From assembly GCF_000315625.1 (NCBI RefSeq), contig NW_005434444.1, forward strand, positions 1 to 58,656: a stretch of 58,656 bases of DNA, read 5' to 3'. Shown here one piece after another: positions 25,576-34,010 of the stretch. This stretch comes from Guillardia theta CCMP2712 (lineage: Eukaryota; Protista; Cryptophyta). The stretch's first letter is position 1, and each line of letters begins with the position of its first letter. Position numbers and translations under genes: made by a program. The notes under the pieces are model-generated. The model was not told the origin of the DNA, made no database searches, and saw only the letters and a program-made list of their open reading frames with translations.

Positions 25576-26016
25576 ACTGCCGGCATTATGATAATAGGCA
25601 GGAGATGAGGGGGATGAACTGGACGGCCTGCGCTTCTAGCAGGAGGAAGAGAACGAGGAAGAGAGGAGAAGAGTAGAGAGGAGAGGAGAGAGGAGAGAGG
25701 AGAGAGGAGAAGAGAGGAGAGGGATGTACGAGGCCAAGAGAACGAGGAGGGAAGGAGAGGGGATTGGGAGGACAAGCGAGTGGAGGAGAGGTAAGAAGTG
25801 GGAGTCTCAGGAATGAAAGCAAGAAACAGCAAGTGGAGAGTGCGAGGAGGGGGGAGTTACACGGAAATGATAGGAGAAGGCAGAAGATGGAGAGAAAGAG
25901 GAGGAGCAACGAAGCTTGTGGTGGTAGAGGTCGTAGCAGCAGAAACGAGGCGCCGACGAGAGGAGGAGGAGGAGGAGGAGGAGGGGCAAGGGCTGATCAT
26001 CGTGACATGCAACAGG

Positions 26017-26467
26017 ATGGCCGAGATGGAGGCAGCCATGACAAAGCTCGAGCTGGAAGGGGAGGGAGGAGCAGCATGCAGCATCCGCGAGCACACGTTC
26101 ATGGAAGTGATAGAGGACGTGAAGGTGTACTACCAGCTGCTTCTCATGAAGGACAGCATTTACGTGTGGATCGGTGCCTCCTCGCCGTCCATGAAGAATC
26201 TTGACATGGCGATGCCTTCGTCTCTCGACCCCCTTCCTCTCTCGGTGACCCTCATGGGGGAGGGGAGCGAGTCCATCGGCTCTTCTCTTGCCCGCCGGCT
26301 GTCCATGCGGCTCAAGGCGCAGGTGTTTGTGAGCTACAACCTTCCTTCCTCCATGCCGGCGCTGCAGGGGCAGGCGGAGAAGCGTCTCTTTGAAGAGCTC
26401 AAGGATACGAAACTGCAGGTGAGCAGCCTTGCGATCGTCCGCCACTGACCGAGCCCTGCAGCTGTGA
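26017..26467 (+). CDS. PSMG4: Proteasome assembly chaperone 4
   Basis: YYQLLLMKDSIYVWIG, NLDMAMP, SLARRLSMRLKAQVFVSYNLP, AEKRLFEEL; terminal intron 26419-26461 then CTG TGA. Confidence 0.9.
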
Positions 26468-26679
26468 GCTTGAAGGAGCGGGAAAGTGAGACAGTGATGG
26501 AGATGGGAAGAAGAGAGCGAGAACGATGGGGAGACGAACTTCGATCACAACAAGTCATGCGAGGAGAGGAGCACAAGGAGCAAGACGAGGAGGAGGAGGA
26601 CGTGGAACATAAGGAGGAGCAGGAGGGACGGTGTAAATAATCTCTTAGGTGAATCTCAAAAATCAGCAAGGACGAGAGT

Positions 26680-29600
26680 TTAAGGAGAAGAGCTCTGAAC
26701 CTCGAGGATGCCCTGCGAGTCCTTCTTAATCTTGTTCGGCCTCCCTCCTCCCGATGGCGTCTGCGGAGGCCCCCTCCTCGCTTCCATCTGCACTCCTGCC
26801 GGCTCGTCCTCGACTTCCTCCACCCTCGTCGCCTCCCGAGCCGCCTCGGGCGAGTACTCCCTGCTCCCGAAGTTCCTCTCGTGGGGCTGGCAGATCTTGA
26901 TGTCAAGGTTGGAGGTCGAGGGCAGGTGCTCAGCTGGGTACAGGGAAGGGTTCTTGACCACTCTCCTGTAGTAGTCGTCGATGTTGGGGAAGTACTGCTC
27001 TTTGCAGTACTTGTAGAAGAGGATGGGGAGGGTGCACATGGATACCGTGACGATGGAGCTGAGCCAGAACAGGAAGCCCTTTCCCAGCTCGTAGATCACG
27101 TCGTACACGTTGTCCTGCGTGTCCCAGCTCCCGAGAGATTCGGGGGGGAAGCCGTTGTAGGACACGAGGAAGAGGTACCAGACCAAGATCGAGCCCACGT
27201 ACACAAACCAGTGCATCCAGGTCCATGAGCGAGTGTGAAGCCCCATCACGATCGTTACTGTCCAGATCACGTTGGTCAGCACCGTCGTGCCTGCCCCCCA
27301 GAGATCTTGGTTCCTCCCCGAGCTGCCGTACGTGTTCAGGTCCAGCATCTCCAGAGTCACAAAGTAGAGGACGGTGGCGTGCACGATGGCGCCGACGATG
27401 AACATGCTGAAGCGGGCGAGGGAGAACCTGACGTTGAAGTGACCGGCACTGTACAGCTCGGGATGCGCCCGGACGACAGACGGGTGGAGGTCGCGGTCCA
27501 GTACGGCAAAGAACATGACGGGGAGAGACGTGAAGACGAGGTTGTAGAGAGCCTGGTAACCATCGTCGTAGAGCGGCTGGTGGAAAGTCAGAGCAGGCGA
27601 GAGAAGAGGAGAAGAGGGAGAGAGGGAGAGGAGCGAGATAAAAGAGACCAAGGAGAGGAGAAGACGATGAAGGGAAGAGGTGGTGGTGGTGAACGAAGAG
27701 GAGGAGAACGAGGGATAGAGGAGAAAAGCTGACCTGAGCTGAAAACGCGTTGTTCAGAGAGAACCAGAAGAGGGTAAAGGCATAGGAGATGTTCTTGTAG
27801 AAGAAGTAGCAGACCATGGTACCGATCCTGTTGTAGCTCCACCTCCCATGAATCAGCAGCAGCCGCTCAAGGTACGCGAAGCGAGGCAGCGCGTAGTCTG
27901 ACGCAAGCACCGCCTGCTGCCCCTCCTTGCCTCTGATCCCTATCCCAATATGCGCGGCCTGAATCATGCTCACGTCGTTGGCTCCGTCTCCGATCGCCAG
28001 CGTAATCTGACCGGGGATGTTGTCCTTGACCAGCAGCGTCATCTGAGCCTTCTGCGACGGCGTCACGCGGCAGCACACGACAGCCTTGCATCGGACGCTT
28101 GCTTCCAGGAAGAGAATCTTGAGCTCCGGAGTTGCTGCTGCCCTCAAGCAAGTCCCGTCGATGACCAGGGCCCACCCCCCGGGCTTGGGGGTCTGGGTGA
28201 GCTTACTGAGCTCGATGATCTTCCGCTTGACTCGCTCCTTGAGCAGCGCGTCCTTGAGTTTGCTCTCGATGCTCAAGAACTCGGCGTAGCTCTGAGCGTC
28301 GTTGCCCTGCTTGATCCGAGAGGCAATCTCCTCGACCTTGGAAAACACTTCTGCTCCTGAGGAGTTCTGCTTCCCACTCTTGCAGATCTCCTGCACCAGC
28401 GGCGCATTCCTATGGTGCGAAGCATCAAGACAGCGGGTGAGGTTCTGCTCATGCTGCGACGCATCCTTGCTCCACCCAGGGTCGTCAGAGAGCATGTCGT
28501 CTTGACTGATCCTGTTGAGCGGCTCCATCTCTTGCGTCAGGAGAGCAGTCGCAAACCCGATGTTGATAGCTGTCTCCAGCTTATCCCCGGTGAGGACCCA
28601 GATCTTGATCATCGCCTTAGCTAGCTGCGAGATGCACTCCCCGACATTCTCCTGCAGCTTGTCCTCCAGTGCAGTGACTCCGTGCAGGGTTAACGAGCGT
28701 CTGCGGCAGAGTGAGCACAAGGACAAGACAAGCACGACGAGCTTACTCGTGGGGAGTGGAAGAGTCGAACAGAACTGACTCGCAGCCATCCGCTGTATGA
28801 TGCTCCTCCAGCTCACATGCCAGCTGAAGAAGAAGCCATCAGCCCACCACCCACGTCCACAGCGGATCGTGACAAGGAAAAACTCGTTTGCGACCCAGCA
28901 AGGGAGAAGGCAGACAAGGAACACACAAGGGGCGGCGAGGAGGAAGGGGTGCGGGGTAAGGGGAAAGGACGGAGTTGAGACAAGTGAGGCGGATGTATAG
29001 AGGACAAGAGTGACCTGTCTCAGCGCCTTCTCTCGCCCATCGCTGAGCAAGGAGGCTTTCTTGAACCTGTCGTTCCAGGCGGAGTAGTATTCAGGTTCAA
29101 GAACCCTTCCCGCAAACACCAGAGTGCGCAGGCCCTGCTCGCCGAACTTGTCGACCTGCTGCTGAGTTGACTTGTAGTAGGGGCACGCGTTGACGTCGAT
29201 GAAGGGCATGACACTCGTGTCAGCGCCTTTGATGAGGAGGAGGATGTTGGACTTGGTCTCGTCTGATATCACGACGCTCGTCCTCTTCCTGTTGTTGTCA
29301 AACGCATTGAAGTTCAAGACGGTCCATTTCTTCTCGACCCCCTGCCCCACAGGCCCGTCGGACGTCTTGATGTGAATGTCTTTCATGTTGCGCCGGCAGA
29401 AGAAAACTCCTGCAAAGACGAGCACAAGTCAAAACAATGATGGAAGAATGACATCAGTTCGGCATGTTGACACTTACCAAGATTCCTGGCAGCCTGCACG
29501 AAAGCTCCTTCATCAGGCGACTCGGCCTGGTATGCTGGTATGTCGGACCCCTCGTTGTACTCTACTTGAGCATTGTGGTTGACCGCCATGTTGAACAGAA

Positions 29601-31429
29601 AGTCTTCGATGATCTTCCTGTCCTGGCTCTCCCGCCACTTGCCTGACAGAGCCAGGAAACAGTCATCCTTACAACGGGACCACTCCTTCTCTCCTCACCC
29701 CCCATCAATCGATCGTCCACGAACTTGAAACCTGGATCAGCACCTGCAGCACGGACAAGTCAAGCACGAGCAAGCACCGTCGGTCGTCGTCTACCAGGTG
29801 GAGGCAGAGGATCGTCGGGCAGGTCTCTGCCTTGTCTTCGAGCGATGGCTCGTTCGACCTCACAGTAACCTTGACCATACTCGACACCGGCGATGCTGCA
29901 CTTCTTGAACTCCATCAGGTTTTGGGTCAAAGTTCCTGTCTTGTCCGAGAAGATGTAGTTGATTTGCCCTAGCTCCTCGCAGAGTCCAAGACTGCGAGCC
30001 TTGGAAGGAATGTCGTCTTCCTCCGCATACATCTCCCGGTCGCTGCTGATCAGGATGGATATGACCAACTTCACCATCTCCACAGACACGTAAAGGGAGA
30101 TGGGAACCAACAAGCTGAGAAGAATCAAGAAACTGAAGAAAGACAGGAACCCGGTCGTTCCAGGCTTCTGCACATTGAACGAGATAGAAGTGTTCTGGGG
30201 GCTGAGGTACCAGGCTCCCTTCAGTTCTGATGAATTGTTCATCGTACCTGCTCCTATGGCCCCGACAAGACACAGGATACCAAGGATCGCAAGGATCCCG
30301 ATGATGTAAACATTCAGCTTTCTCTCGATGTTGCTCACTTTGTTCGGAGGGTCAGTCATGTTCATTTGGATCTTCGTTTCCTTCCCAGTGTAAACGGCGA
30401 GGCCGATGCACCACTTTGTGTTCTTCAGCTTCGTGCTTCGTTGCATGAACTGACCACCGGACGCTCCTCCCGTCAGCGGGATGTCTTGACCCTCCCACTC
30501 GATCCTTGCGTTGAAGTCGTACAGCAAAGCATCCGGAATGTGACAGTTGACTTTGACTTTCAAGGTTTTCAGCTTCGCAAGATTACAATCCACAGAGTGC
30601 CCATCGACCTGGTGAGGCTCTCCAACAAGGTGCTTGTGAAGTGCCTCGGGAGCTTCTCTGATCTTCAAGTTCGTCTCCCCGTCCAAGTTTGCTGTTTCAA
30701 GGAAACAAGTCCCGTCCACCGACGAGGTGCACAACAGCGACAAGTCTGCAGGCACCATGGGAGGACAATCGTCGTCGCCAGTTTTCACCCGAACGATACT
30801 TCCTACAGCCACCTGCTTCCATGGCACCTGCTCGAAGTCACCTCTATCCCAGTTGAACACTTCGGTCACTCGGCTGTTCTCTTCAATGTCGGATTTGTAT
30901 CTTCTATAATCCTCACTTGCATCTTTGATTGCAGAAATCGCCAACACAGATATCAAAGGAAACCAGTACGTTGTTCCCGTCACGGGGGATAGAGGAGTAG
31001 ACGCTAAGATGGCGATGACAAGAAAGTAGCAGTTTGCCAGCCGATGAAATTGCAAGAACAAGTTCAAGGGAAGGAACGTGACGATTGTGTATTTGTTGGT
31101 CTTCACGTAGTTGCTCTCAAAGTGCTTGTGCGGGTCCGGTGGACATTCCACCTCCCTGCAAGAAAGTCAACAAACAACTGTAAATTGCACACTCAGCATT
31201 CAAAATTCACCTTCTGTCATTCGCTTCACTGTCATCGGCAGTTGCAGGATAGTCTTTGCCTGTGAAGGAGGGGAGAGAAAAGTTACTCTTCATGGTTCCT
31301 GCAGCCTTTTCAAAGACTGTCCGTTTGACGGCCTGGTTGTGATTGATAACGACTTCGGAGTATTTCACTTCCGGCTTTTGAATTGCTCCAGGAAACATTA
31401 TGAACAAAACCAGCAGTCCGGCGCAGCAT
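26680..31429 (-). CDS. P4-ATPase phospholipid flippase (alpha subunit moiety), probably the C-terminal part of a CDC50 fusion
   Basis: NYVKTNKY, LDGETNLK, PISLYVSVE, FSDKTGTLT, AESPDEGA, KGAD, EDKLQ, LTGDKLETA, VVCCRVTPSQK, IGDGANDVSMIQ, YFFYKN, TM7-10 segments. Confidence 0.97.
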
Positions 31430-32772
31430 CTGAAGATATCAAAATTCATGATTCAAACAAAGCATGCGTGCCAATTAGAATCACAGAACAGAAGCAAAAC
31501 TTGGGGTAAATCGAAGAATGAAAGGAAAAATCAATAAGGACTACTGGAAGGAACACAAATAGTAGGTTTTGCGATTAAGCAGACTTGAGGCTCTCAGGCA
31601 CGAAAACTTACACAAGTGTGATGCAGCCGACGGCCAATGTCATCGCACCCACAAACTACTGAAATTTTCAGGATTGCTGCTGGCCATGGCACGAAAACAA
31701 TCCTCACCGTTCGATCCGTTCCGAAGGTGTTTGCATTTGTCAGAACAAAGCCTTTAGTCCCTCTGAAGCTTGCAACAGGAAAGTTGACATCTGATGGAGA
31801 CGGTCAGGAAAGGGGCATGAAGAGACAGGGTCACTTACTGATTGAAAGACGGTACGTGCCTGCTTTCAGACCGTTCGGAATTATCCTGTGAAGCTTCCAG
31901 AAATCCGGTGATGCCGCTGGTCTCATCCACACCATGAAATCCTCATCCGAAACATTATGCCAACAGTTGTAACGTCCCGCTGGGTTCGCAGTACCCCTCA
32001 AAGTCTCTGAAAAGCCGCTTAGGCTGAAATCATAGCCACCCAAAGAATAACAGTTCTGCTTTAGCCATGCCTCACTTTGACTTGCGTAGCGGCCTTTCAA
32101 TCCAGCACGTGATGATATTCCCTCTTTGGTCCAGGGGACAACATTGGAGTTGGAGTCTTGAAGTAGAAATGTATCATTGAAAAAGCTCAGGGCACCGAGA
32201 CCACAAGGGTAGTAGTAAATCTTCTCTTCTTTGCCAGCGATCGACTCTGTGTAAGATTCAAGAGGCCAACACCCGCTGAAGGAACCCGTCGATGGTACTC
32301 CAGCAGCATCCACAGTCCATTTGTCTCTGTATTGAACTGGATCCTGCGAAGCGACATATCGTCGATGATTTTGGAAGAACTTCGTCAGCGTGTAGTAGAA
32401 GTAAACAGGTCCAGGGAGGTCTTCCTGCAGGGTGAAGGAAATCGGAGGGTTAGACTGGGTGACTTGGTTTCCGCAGACTGATCTCTCTGTTGGTGCGCAT
32501 CTACATGCAGAGCTGGGATTTTGAATGCATTTGTCTAGATCAAAATAAACGAGCGGGGAACCATTCGAGGGGAAAGATTTGATATGCGACCGCTGGCTCA
32601 AAGCTATTGATCCAATAATCAGAAGTATGAGCCCGACAAGCAGGAAGGTTGAGATCACGCATGGACCAGTGAACACAAGCTGTTGTACGGGGGCTCTCTG
32701 TTGCAAGACTATGTTCTTGCTTGGGGCTTTTGATTTCTTCTTATCGTGAGGGTCTTTGCTCTGAGCCGCCAT
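31346..32772 (-). CDS. CDC50/LEM3 family flippase beta subunit moiety (TM2 is completed by an exon that continues into the P4-ATPase)
   Basis: QQRAPVQQLVFT, TM1 (VISTFLLVGLILLIIGSIAL), VYFYYTLTKFFQNHRRYVASQD, YPCGLGALSFFNDTF, EDFMVWMRPAASPDFWKL, NFPVASFRGTK, TM2 FVGAMTLAVGCITLVCCAGLLVLFIMF. Confidence 0.93.
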
Positions 32773-33686
32773 GGCTGAAATGAAGAGCATATTTTTTGCC
32801 AAGGTTCCCAAGAGCTCAAGAGACCCTGCACACGTTTAGACGGGAGGAGGACGTGAATGGAAACGCGCGGCCTCACCGGTTCTCCAAGGTTACGACTCGC
32901 CCTGGCACATCAGATCCCCTCCGAAAGTCCCAGCATCTTTGCGCAAAGCCTCTTCAGCCGATCTGAATACCCGAGGGTGAGTAAGCAATAATTTCATGAG
33001 ACATTCTCTGCCCCATGTGATTTCAGACTCTTCCGTCGCAATTCAATCGTAAATTCCCTTCTTCCAGTCTCTTCCCCAATATAATGATACCTTGAAAGTG
33101 ATCTTCCCCCTACACTCTGTCCTGTCCTTCCCTTCCCTGCCCTTCCCTTCCCTGTTCTTCTCCGTTGGTTACCTCTCCAAACCCGACTCGTTAGTCGCCT
33201 CCTTCTTTCTCCCTCGTCCTCCTCCCTGTCTTCGCTAGAAAATATTTCCCCACATCGTCAACCATTCCTGTTCCGCCAAGCTCACCCCACCCCTCCTGCC
33301 TAACCCTTTCTGACTTTACGAGCACATGTACCCCCATCAGTCCCACCATTCACCCCCTCCAATCAGAGATATGACCCCTGATACTGAAGTTGAATGACCT
33401 GAACCATACTACCCACCACGTCCCCCTTTTCCATTACCGCACCAATCACCCCGTCCCCTTTCAAAGACCCCTACATATCCATGGTACTACCCCATGCTTG
33501 CGTTCCCACTTCTTGCCTCCTGTCGCCTTCACCCCCGCAAGGTCAGCAGACCACCCCTACGTCATACGCACATTCTTGGTTCCCCTCGCACCCCTACCCC
33601 CACTGTGTACCCATGGAATTAATCTCTCGCACTCCCCCTAACCACCCCTACCCCTGGGTCGCATACAACAATCACCTGGCGGTTTT

Positions 33687-33960
33687 CTATTAACTAAACT
33701 TTGGTGTACTTTACTACTGGTTACCAACAAACGGAAAACCGGTCCGTCGCAACTGAGTTCGGCCCGGCGACTCGATGATCGGACACAGGCTACTGTGAAG
33801 GCGGCCCGGGGCCCGCCGGGGGCCGGCGAGCCCGCGGCGGCGACGGCATCACTGAGGCCGCGACCGTGAACCGGGCGGCACTGGCCGGGCAATCTCTGAG
33901 TTGCCCTCTGACCTCACTGCCTTTGCTTTACTCCGTGACTAAACTCAACTAGTGCTCTAC
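33687..33960. other. GC-rich island upstream of the CDC50/P4 gene, with a minus-strand variant of the AAAGTTTAGTTAA motif
   Basis: taactaaactttg at about 33691-33703 is the reverse complement of caaagtttagtta; GC-rich core at 33730-33910. Confidence 0.5.
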
Positions 33961-34010
33961 TGAAATCAGAGTCACGATTCAATGCCCGATGATGATTGAC
34001 TTTGACTGTC

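What the first reader, a model, noticed from the sequence alone, without database searches (positions are those of the whole stretch)
26680..32772. Predicted natural CDC50-P4-ATPase fusion: a single-chain lipid flippase
Seen in sequence (minus strand): the CDC50 exon splices through GT-AG introns 31838-31791 (48 nt), 31707-31656 (52 nt), 31611-31430 (182 nt, donor GTAAGT) and 31210-31156 (55 nt). Every phase matches and there is no stop. The product reads ...GTYRLSINVNFPVASFRGTKGFVLTNANTFGTDRT-FVGAMTLAVGCITLVCCAGLLVLFIMFPG-AIQKPEVKYSEV...DSEANDRREVECPPDPHKHFESNYVKTNKY...DKTGT. The CDC50 second TM helix only reaches normal length using the exon (31429-31211) that continues into the ATPase. Read as a separate gene, the ATPase would start with an atypical hydrophobic N-terminus less than 100 bp after the CDC50 stop. 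Established knowledge: P4-ATPases usually work with a separately encoded CDC50 beta subunit, and the CDC50 C-terminus and P4 N-terminus are both cytosolic, so a roughly 60-aa linker fits the topology. Inference: a 12-TM self-chaperoned flippase with fixed 1:1 pairing. I do not know of a described natural example, but I cannot search.
Basis: partly seen in the sequence, partly recalled or inferred. Interest (0 to 1): 0.93.

Follow-up and report, generated by a model that had tools for sequence, protein, structure and literature searches.

The report
Natural CDC50–P4-ATPase flippase fusion gene
In the alga Guillardia theta the two subunits of a lipid flippase (the CDC50 helper and the P4-ATPase pump) are spliced into one mRNA with a single 1734-residue reading frame; related microbes have the same fusion, and I found no paper that describes it.

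Summary
Confirmed. The window is a Guillardia theta CCMP2712 scaffold. Each contig runs from the CDC50 5' UTR into the ATPase. An 11-exon GT-AG model (32790..26680, minus strand) translates 100% to a 1734-aa MMETSP transcript ORF (UniProt A0A7S4UTM1, auto-named "Phospholipid-transporting ATPase"). The genome annotation wrongly splits the locus into two partial genes (EKX32363.1 and EKX32362.1).

The fusion is not confined to this species. The same order (CDC50, a linker of about 45-60 aa, then a P4A-ATPase) occurs in Hanusia phi, Cryptomonas paramaecium and at least seven metagenomic lineages. Two genomic contigs carry the junction inside one uninterrupted ORF. The fused CDC50 domains form one strongly supported clade. 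The linker is under purifying selection and holds a clade-specific motif, KPxVxYxxVxI. All P4-ATPase catalytic motifs are intact. A complex model places the CDC50 part on TM7/TM10 in the canonical way (score 0.79, best control 0.00).

Still unshown: the full-length protein, binding in cis, flippase activity, and absence of minor unfused isoforms. Eight full-text searches found no description. This is a new variant of a known system.

The parts
32877..33265 (-). First, non-coding exon of the 5' UTR. The upper end is approximate. It contains a 35-codon upstream ORF (32997-32890).
   Evidence: Contigs X1 and X2 run about 162-170 nt beyond 33100. Translation of the spliced leader shows an in-frame TAA before the main ATG.
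32826..32876 (-). 5'-UTR intron (51 nt, GT-AG)
   Evidence: Skipped in X1 and X2; sequence read
31839..32790 (-). Coding exon 1: start codon (32790, or in-frame ATG at 32772), CDC50 N-tail, TM1 (32661-32605) and most of the ectodomain
   Evidence: Pfam CDC50 1.1e-40; exact match to P0176; hydropathy
31791..31838 (-). Intron 1 (48 nt)
31708..31790 (-). Coding exon 2: end of the CDC50 ectodomain
31656..31707 (-). Intron 2 (52 nt)
31612..31655 (-). Coding exon 3 (44 nt): first half of CDC50 TM2 (FVGAMTLAVGCITLV)
   Evidence: (X2 record 7 lays it)
31430..31611 (-). Intron 3 (182 nt, GTAAGT...CAG). It splits TM2, and if retained the frame stops at once (TAA).
   Evidence: Skipped in X1 and X2
31211..31429 (-). 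Coding exon 4: second half of CDC50 TM2 (to 31393), then the cytosolic linker of about 60 aa (31392-31213) with the conserved motif KPEVKYSEVVI (31377-31345)
   Evidence: linker pN 0.085 against pS 0.64
31156..31210 (-). Intron 4 (55 nt). If retained the frame reads ...ANDRR-TGA.
29795..31155 (-). Coding exon 5: P4-ATPase N-terminal domain, TM1-4, DGET (30683-30672), PISL (30104-30093), DKTGT (29945-29931)
   Evidence: Pfam PhoLip_ATPase_N; motifs
26680..29743 (-). Coding exons 6-11 of the ATPase: 29743-29699, 29642-29478, 29409-29015, 28823-28747, 28700-27734 and 27576-26680 including the stop. They carry TGDK (28591-28580), GDGAND (27991-27974), TM5-10 and the C-tail. Introns: 29794-29744, 29698-29643, 29477-29410, 29014-28824, 28746-28701, 27733-27577.
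   Evidence: Spliced model translates exactly to P0176. The first three introns and the donor at 29014 are seen in X1/X2. Pfam PhoLip_ATPase_C and Cation_ATPase.

Best explanation
The locus is one gene, not two. Its mature mRNA encodes a 1734-residue polypeptide. An N-terminal CDC50/LEM3 beta-subunit module comes first: cytosolic tail, TM1, a glycosylatable ectodomain and TM2. A cytosolic linker of about 60 residues then joins it to a complete P4A-type phospholipid-translocating ATPase with 10 TM helices and the A, N and P domains.

Shown: the spliced fused mRNA; the intact reading frame and catalytic motifs; conservation of the same architecture in a single clade that includes three named cryptophyte genera and several environmental lineages; purifying selection on the linker.

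Inferred: the CDC50 module folds back onto TM7/TM10 and the exoplasmic loops of its own ATPase, as free CDC50 does in solved P4A complexes. The result would be a 12-TM single-chain flippase whose assembly, ER exit and 1:1 stoichiometry need no separately made partner. [quoted passage not shown] G. theta also keeps one free CDC50 gene and six unfused P4-ATPase genes, so the fused gene is a dedicated, old paralogue rather than the cell's only flippase.
For: The spliced junctions appear in two cDNA-type contigs from separate studies, and the introns are present in a DNA-like run.

The window model equals the MMETSP ORF P0176 / UniProt A0A7S4UTM1 at 100%.

PF03381 and PF16209 lie on one chain in P0004, P0007, P0009, P0012, P0167, P0168, P0169, P0181 (Cryptomonas paramaecium), P0184, P0190 and P0198.

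Uninterrupted genomic ORFs span the junction in L001:1653-6062 (1469 aa) and L002:3681-5351.

All fused CDC50 domains fall in one clade with SH-aLRT 100 and a stem of 0.66.

The linker is as conserved as the domains: 86% identity, pN 0.085 against pS 0.64. It carries the motif KPxVxYxxVxI. Three lineages have no Met anywhere in the linker, so no separate ATPase start is available there.

DGET, PISL, DKTGT, TGDK and GDGAND are present, and hydropathy shows 2+10 hydrophobic helices.

The ATPase part is closest to the CDC50-dependent P4A structures ATP8B1, ATP8A1 and Drs2p (E about 1e-187 to 1e-178). It is far weaker to the CDC50-independent ATP9A and Neo1 (1e-96 and 1e-87).

The CDC50 part aligns end to end with Lem3 and CDC50A.

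Complex model: ipSAE 0.79 in three runs, best of 3 controls 0.00. That mark was reached by 51 of 78 solved complexes and 2 of 108 mismatched pairs. The runs agree in at least 83% of contacts and partner pLDDT is 76. Contacts are CDC50 TM1/TM2 with TM10 and ectodomain 290-300 with the TM7-8 loop.
Against: There is no protein-level evidence: no mass spectrometry and no blot. The only raw-read RNA run laid just 2 reads, so transcript 5'/3' ends and minor isoforms could not be examined. Contigs drop rare variants.

Stops lie immediately inside introns 3 and 4, and the G. theta linker exon holds in-frame Mets (M371, M406). Unfused products are therefore conceivable. Hanusia phi transcript sets do contain intron-retaining isoforms (P0001, P0178).

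The complex model may score high from memory of solved P4-ATPase/CDC50 complexes, and it cannot tell cis from trans binding. X1 may be the same data from which P0176 was assembled, so the independent RNA sources may number two rather than three.
Confidence: 0.8

Rival explanations
1. Dual-output locus. Besides the fusion, regulated retention of intron 4 (or 3) and an internal start give a free CDC50 (427 aa, ending ...ANDRR) and a free ATPase (from M406). On this view the fusion is only one of several products.
For: TGA follows directly after the intron-4 donor and TAA after the intron-3 donor. In-frame Mets sit at residues 371 and 406. Intron 3, at 182 nt, is much longer than its neighbours. 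Intron-retaining isoforms were assembled for Hanusia phi (P0001, P0178).
Against: X1 and X2 contigs pass all junctions without a break. Homologs with no intron at the junction (L001, L002 and the ORF-called P0004, P0007, P0009, P0012) cannot use this route. P0009, P0184 and P0198 have no Met in the linker. A stop soon after a donor is expected in any retained short intron. The retained-intron records may simply be pre-mRNA.
Confidence: 0.12
2. Precursor model. The fusion is translated as one chain, and the linker is then cut by a protease to give an ordinary two-subunit flippase.
For: The linker is long, cytosolic and mostly low in complexity. Its conserved motif could be a recognition site. 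No protein data exist to exclude this.
Against: No known protease site or precedent exists in P4-ATPases (my knowledge). The conserved motif directly follows TM2, and in the model its first residues (375-379) touch the segment after TM10. That fits a packing element better than a cleavage site.
Confidence: 0.06
3. Binding in trans. The CDC50 module of one chain binds the ATPase of another chain (a swapped dimer) or serves G. theta's unfused P4-ATPases, rather than binding its own ATPase.
For: G. theta has six other P4-ATPase loci and only one free CDC50. The complex model was made with separate chains and cannot tell cis from trans.
Against: A linker of about 60 residues is long enough to reach from TM10 to the ATPase N-terminus on the same molecule (geometric inference from solved P4A structures, not computed here). 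The two modules appear to have stayed fused across the whole clade, which fits a dedicated pair.
Confidence: 0.08
4. Artefact. Two adjacent genes were joined by chimeric transcript assembly or read-through, and the in-frame junctions arose by chance.
For: The official genome annotation has two partial models. Contigs can merge neighbouring genes.
Against: The junction is a canonical splice that completes a membrane helix. The same fusion appears in divergent species and in uninterrupted genomic ORFs. The linker is under purifying selection.
Confidence: 0.02

Closest known systems
Heterodimeric P4A flippases with a separately encoded CDC50 subunit (ATP8B1-CDC50A, ATP8A1-CDC50A, Drs2p-Cdc50p, Dnf1p-Lem3p)
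   Same: Both modules are present with the same domain content, catalytic motifs and membrane topology. They are the best sequence matches to these solved chains. The predicted interface is CDC50 TM1/TM2 on TM10 and the ectodomain on the TM7-8 loop.
   Different: Here the two subunits are one polypeptide, with the beta module N-terminal. The canonical CDC50 tail after TM2 is still present in G. theta's free CDC50 on contig C12 as PRILGDPRYLNW. In the fusion it is replaced by a clade-specific KPxVxYxxVxI motif and a linker.
P4-ATPase-guanylate cyclase chimeras (P4GC / GC-alpha, GC-beta) of alveolates and some stramenopiles (PMC13466520, PMC7858053, PMC6592433)
   Same: This is also a natural, lineage-restricted gene fusion involving a P4A-ATPase in protists.
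   Different: There the ATPase is fused at its C-terminus to a cyclase and still needs a separate CDC50 (PMC13466520). Here the fused partner is the CDC50 subunit itself, at the N-terminus.
P4B ATPases (Neo1p, ATP9A) that work without a beta subunit
   Same: A flippase made from a single gene product.
   Different: P4B enzymes lack CDC50 altogether. The ATPase here is clearly P4A-like: E about 1e-187 against P4A structures, versus 1e-96 and 1e-87 against ATP9A and Neo1. It also carries its CDC50 covalently.
UniProt A0A7S4UTM1 (MMETSP G. theta transcript) and GenBank EKX32362.1 / EKX32363.1
   Same: A0A7S4UTM1 is identical to the product of this locus. The two GenBank models cover parts of it.
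   Different: The UniProt record is named only 'Phospholipid-transporting ATPase'. The GenBank annotation splits the gene into two partial hypothetical proteins. Neither record notes the fusion.

Membership tests
P4-ATPase (P4A subfamily) lipid flippase | PhoLip_ATPase_N and PhoLip_ATPase_C domains flanking P-type ATPase core domains | tested here: met
   PF16209 3.5e-22, PF16212 1.8e-24, and PF13246 on the window ORFs. The same set is precomputed for the homologs.
P4-ATPase (P4A subfamily) lipid flippase | Catalytic motifs: DKTGT phosphorylation site, DGET in the A domain, TGDK, GDGxND, and PISL in TM4 | tested here: met
   DGET 591, PISL 784, DKTGT 837, TGDK 1151, GDGAND 1351
P4-ATPase (P4A subfamily) lipid flippase | Ten transmembrane helices | tested here: inconclusive
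   A simple hydropathy scan finds clear peaks for TM1, 3, 4, 6, 7, 9 and 10. TM2, 5 and 8 were identified by eye from the sequence. No dedicated topology predictor or full-length fold was run.
P4-ATPase (P4A subfamily) lipid flippase | Closer to CDC50-dependent P4A than to P4B enzymes | tested here: met
   ATP8B1, ATP8A1 and Drs2p at 1e-187 to 1e-178; ATP9A and Neo1 at 1e-96 and 1e-87
P4-ATPase (P4A subfamily) lipid flippase | ATP-dependent phospholipid translocation | not testable with these tools
   Needs expression and a lipid-uptake or ATPase assay
CDC50/LEM3 beta subunit | PF03381 domain between two transmembrane helices, with both termini cytosolic | tested here: met
   PF03381 1.1e-40. 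TM1 is 44-62 and TM2 is 346-372. End-to-end alignment to Lem3 covers residues 17-374.
CDC50/LEM3 beta subunit | Conserved ectodomain cysteines and N-glycosylation sequons | tested here: met
   C174, C196, C247 and C276 are invariant in the fusion clade. Sequons lie at N76, N205 and N279 in the ectodomain. Disulfide pairing itself was not tested.
CDC50/LEM3 beta subunit | Canonical short C-terminal tail after TM2 (P-R-x-L-G-D-x-x-Y-L-x-W type) ending the protein | tested here: not met
   The free G. theta CDC50 on C12 has PRILGDPRYLNW. The fused clade has KPxVxYxxVxI and continues into the ATPase. That this tail is general to the family is from my own knowledge plus hits P0022-P0024.
CDC50/LEM3 beta subunit | Binds a P4-ATPase through TM7/TM10 and the exoplasmic loops | tested here: inconclusive
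   The complex model scores 0.79 against a best control of 0.00, with the canonical contact pattern. It is a model, possibly drawn from memory of solved complexes, not a measurement.
Natural single-chain (beta-alpha) flippase | Continuous ORF across both modules in mature mRNA, and in genomic DNA of relatives | tested here: met
   mRNA; genomic ORFs
Natural single-chain (beta-alpha) flippase | The full-length polypeptide exists in cells | not testable with these tools
   No proteomic data were reachable

The most novel reading that the evidence does not exclude
The CDC50-P4A fusion is an ancient flippase lineage, found across cryptophytes and possibly more widely. In it, the clade-specific post-TM2 motif KPxVxYxxVxI and the tether have replaced the normal CDC50 tail. 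They act as a built-in regulatory or assembly element, giving a self-sufficient 12-TM flippase that needs no partner. Such a protein could be expressed from one gene as a minimal flippase for structural and synthetic-biology work.
Probability: 0.55. Interest if true: 0.7.

Novelty: new variant of a known kind. Interest (0 to 1): 0.62.

Why it matters
P4A flippases are described everywhere as obligate two-gene heterodimers. How, where and in what ratio the CDC50 subunit joins the pump is a standing practical problem for expression, trafficking and structural studies. A conserved natural beta-alpha fusion would matter in four ways:

1. It is a "Rosetta-stone" confirmation from evolution that the 1:1 complex is the functional unit.
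2. It shows that the CDC50 C-terminus and the ATPase N-terminus can be tethered by about 50-60 residues without loss of the gene over long evolutionary time.
3. It offers a ready-made single-gene flippase for heterologous expression, complementation without a beta subunit, and cryo-EM.
4. It corrects the G. theta annotation, where the gene is split into two partial models.

It does not change the basic picture of how flippases work.

Tried and rejected
- **Raw-read RNA run X19:** only 2 reads were laid, so there is no information on transcript ends, strand or isoform ratios.
- **A conserved internal Met in the linker** as a relic or alternative ATPase start looked promising in the first alignment. 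A wider alignment rejected it: P0009, P0184 and P0198 have no Met in the linker, and the other Mets do not align.
- **ESM Atlas look-ups** of P0176:1-520 and of P0190 gave no usable hit (one search was a busy error). The organisms behind the metagenomic fusions therefore remain unnamed.
- **Rfam scan of 26000-34000** found nothing, so no intronic RNA gene explains the long intron 3.
- **Full-length structure prediction** was not run. The protein (1734 aa) and the shortest complete homolog (1469 aa) exceed the 1200-residue limit.
- **The key evolutionary paper on P4-ATPases** (DOI 10.1016/j.bbamem.2019.02.006) is not held, so I cannot exclude that it mentions such fusions.
- **Chimeric-assembly artefact:** rejected (see rivals).
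Full report
**What is in the sequence.** On the minus strand an ATG at 32772 (with another in-frame ATG at 32790) opens a CDC50-family reading frame. Joining the exons gives an open frame from CDC50 through the P4-ATPase phosphorylation motif DKTGT. Pfam finds CDC50 (1.1e-40) in exon 1. In the ORFs downstream it finds PhoLip_ATPase_N (3.5e-22), Cation_ATPase and PhoLip_ATPase_C. Without splicing, intron 3 stops the frame at ...TLV-TAA, fifteen residues into the second CDC50 membrane helix. Intron 4 would stop it at ...ANDRR-TGA.

**RNA evidence.** A search of public runs found 15 that hold the stretch. Those guessed to be RNA hold at most about 0.74 of the sampled words. My estimate for introns absent is about 0.77.

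Four runs were laid on 29000-33100. X1 (study P1, 2014) and X2 (study P2, 2018) each gave a single contig (4710 and 5697 nt). In each, all four predicted introns are skipped, with CT..AC ends on the + strand. Also skipped are three further ATPase introns and a 51-nt intron in the 5' UTR. Both contigs begin about 165 nt beyond 33100 and run into the ATPase. X2's length fits a complete mRNA: about 430 nt of leader plus 5205 nt of CDS and a short 3' UTR.

X12, which looks like genomic DNA, keeps the introns, so the joined form is an RNA product. The one raw-read RNA run (X19) laid only two reads. Transcript ends and minor isoforms therefore could not be examined.

**Identity of the locus and full gene model.** The window is the 58,656-nt scaffold of Guillardia theta CCMP2712 that carries EKX32363.1 (GUITHDRAFT_56566, partial, 212 aa, CDC50) and EKX32362.1 (GUITHDRAFT_82383, partial, 1232 aa, ATPase).

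A 1734-aa ORF from an MMETSP G. theta transcript (P0176 = UniProt A0A7S4UTM1, named only "Phospholipid-transporting ATPase", type:complete) maps to 32790-26683. An 11-exon, all-GT-AG model translates to it without a single difference. The genome annotation therefore splits one gene in two. The ATPase model starts exactly at exon 5 (residue 433).

**The protein.** Hydropathy gives CDC50 TM1 at 44-62 and TM2 at 346-372. The exon 3/4 junction falls at residue 359/360, inside TM2, so the exon that completes CDC50 also runs into the ATPase. Residues 373-432 form a hydrophilic linker. The ATPase follows, with DGET (591), PISL (784), DKTGT (837), TGDK (1151) and GDGAND (1351), and with hydrophobic segments where TM1-10 are expected.

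Against solved structures, the ATPase part is closest to the CDC50-dependent P4A enzymes ATP8B1, ATP8A1 and Drs2p (E 1e-187 to 1e-178). It is much further from the beta-less P4B enzymes ATP9A and Neo1. The N-terminal part aligns over residues 17-374 with Lem3 and with CDC50A.

**Conservation.** A library-wide search with CDC50 exon 1 gave a group of best hits at about 45% identity. Several were too long for a CDC50. Pfam shows CDC50 followed by PhoLip_ATPase_N on P0004, P0007, P0009 and P0012. Length-matched searches added:
- full-length fusions P0168 (1469 aa), P0169 (1729 aa; 99-100% identical to Hanusia phi EukProt fragments) and P0181 (1529 aa; Cryptomonas paramaecium, MMETSP0038);
- further partial ones: P0167, P0184, P0190 (49 near-identical members) and P0198.

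P0168 is a single uninterrupted ORF on a 75-kb metagenomic contig with eukaryotic neighbours such as a protein kinase, a thioredoxin and bystin (L001:1653-6062). In L002 the CDC50 domain and the ATPase N-domain lie in one 556-aa ORF, followed by further ATPase exons. These genomic ORFs show the fusion without any splicing inference.

In a tree of CDC50 domains, all 11 fusions fall in one clade with SH-aLRT 100 and a stem of 0.66. With them fall 8 fragments too short to judge and one 319-aa record. The ATPase parts of the fusions are 52-58% identical to G. theta's. The best unfused P4-ATPases in the same search reach 37% or less. G. theta's own six unfused paralogues reach 33-51% in the exon-5 region, depending on the segment. 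A single, old fusion event is the simplest reading.

**The linker.** The linker varies in length (about 45-60 aa) but begins in nearly all members with KPxVxYxxVxI directly after TM2. It ends at the usual start of the P4-ATPase N-domain (R-x-x-x-x-P...F-x-S/T-N-F/Y-V). G. theta's second, free CDC50 (contig C12) instead has the ordinary tail PRILGDPRYLNW.

Between G. theta and the Hanusia-like transcript L003, the linker shows 86% identity, pN 0.085 and pS 0.64. This is similar to the flanking domains, so it is translated in this frame and constrained. P0009, P0184 and P0198 have no methionine in the linker at all, so in those lineages a separately initiated ATPase is not available.

**Does the CDC50 part fit its own pump?** A two-chain model was made of residues 20-400 against residues 1385-1650 (TM5-10). 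It scored ipSAE 0.79 in three runs against 0.00 for the best of three controls. That mark was reached by 51 of 78 solved complexes and 2 of 108 mismatched pairs. The runs agree in at least 83% of contacts, and partner pLDDT is 76.

The contacts are those of known P4A/CDC50 complexes. CDC50 TM2 and TM1 lie against TM10 (1604-1623). Ectodomain residues 290-300 touch the TM7-8 loop (1511-1532). The first linker residues (375-379) touch the segment after TM10.

Because like complexes are solved, this shows likeness rather than proof, and it cannot separate cis from trans binding. That a linker of about 60 residues can reach from the foot of TM10 to the ATPase N-terminus is my geometric inference. 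It was not computed.

**Context in the genome.** G. theta has two CDC50 loci, this fused one and a free one on C12. It has seven P4-ATPase loci. The fusion is thus a specialised member of a larger flippase set.

**What remains open.**
- No protein-level evidence exists.
- Stops right after the donors of introns 3 and 4 and in-frame Mets (371, 406) leave room for minor unfused products in G. theta. Hanusia transcript sets include intron-retaining isoforms (P0001 retains intron 1; P0178 retains intron 3 and starts at an ATG inside it). These may be pre-mRNA.
- Cleavage of the linker after translation, or binding in trans, cannot be excluded.

**Novelty.** Eight full-text searches combined CDC50, P4-ATPase, fusion/fused/single polypeptide, Guillardia, cryptophyte and protist. 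They found no description of a natural CDC50-P4-ATPase fusion. A 2024 review of P4-ATPases does not mention one. The 2026 paper on P4-ATPase-cyclase chimeras treats CDC50 only as a separate accessory subunit. The 2019 nomenclature paper is not held.

The sequence itself is public under an automatic name. I rate this a new variant of a known kind: real, conserved and useful, but not a new principle.

Noticed in passing
window 32826-33265 (minus strand): The mRNA has a long, purine-rich leader of about 430 nt with its own 51-nt intron (32876-32826). It also has a 35-codon upstream ORF (32997-32890, MKLLLTHPRVF...) that ends 97 nt before the main ATG in the genome, or about 46 nt in the spliced mRNA.
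   Followed up: partly
window 26680-32790; GenBank EKX32362.1 / EKX32363.1: The public G. theta annotation splits this gene into two adjacent 'partial' hypothetical proteins (CDC50 212 aa, ATPase 1232 aa starting exactly at exon 5). The ATPase model is only 87% identical to the transcript ORF because several introns are mis-called.
   Followed up: yes
P0217 (NCBI MGB1607689.1), member of the P0190 cluster: A 169-aa fragment of this eukaryotic CDC50-flippase fusion family is deposited as a protein of a 'Promethearchaeia archaeon' MAG, on an 849-nt contig. This is almost certainly eukaryotic contamination of an Asgard bin.
   Followed up: no
P0001 and P0178 (EukProt Hanusia phi, isoforms AAC.4 and AAC.3): The Hanusia phi transcript set contains intron-retaining versions of the orthologous gene. 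One stops just after exon 1. The other starts at an ATG inside the intron that precedes the linker exon and reads in frame into the ATPase.
   Followed up: partly
L001:1653-6062 (P0168): The otherwise uninterrupted 1469-aa fusion ORF carries a 27-residue Pro/Arg/Ala-rich insertion inside ATPase TM1 that no homolog has. It is probably a short in-frame intron read through by the gene caller.
   Followed up: no
G000:C12:1010665-1012616 (L004:6665-8616, minus strand): G. theta's second CDC50 gene is multi-exon and free-standing, with the canonical C-terminal tail PRILGDPRYLNW. It is nearest to P0022-P0024, which sit close to the fusion clade in the tree, next to its stem.
   Followed up: partly
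window 26000-34000: G+C rises along the gene, from 43-50% over the CDC50 exons and linker to 55-60% over the 3' ATPase exons. The region upstream of the transcript start (33200-33600) has a very strong GC skew (-0.59 on the + strand).
   Followed up: no
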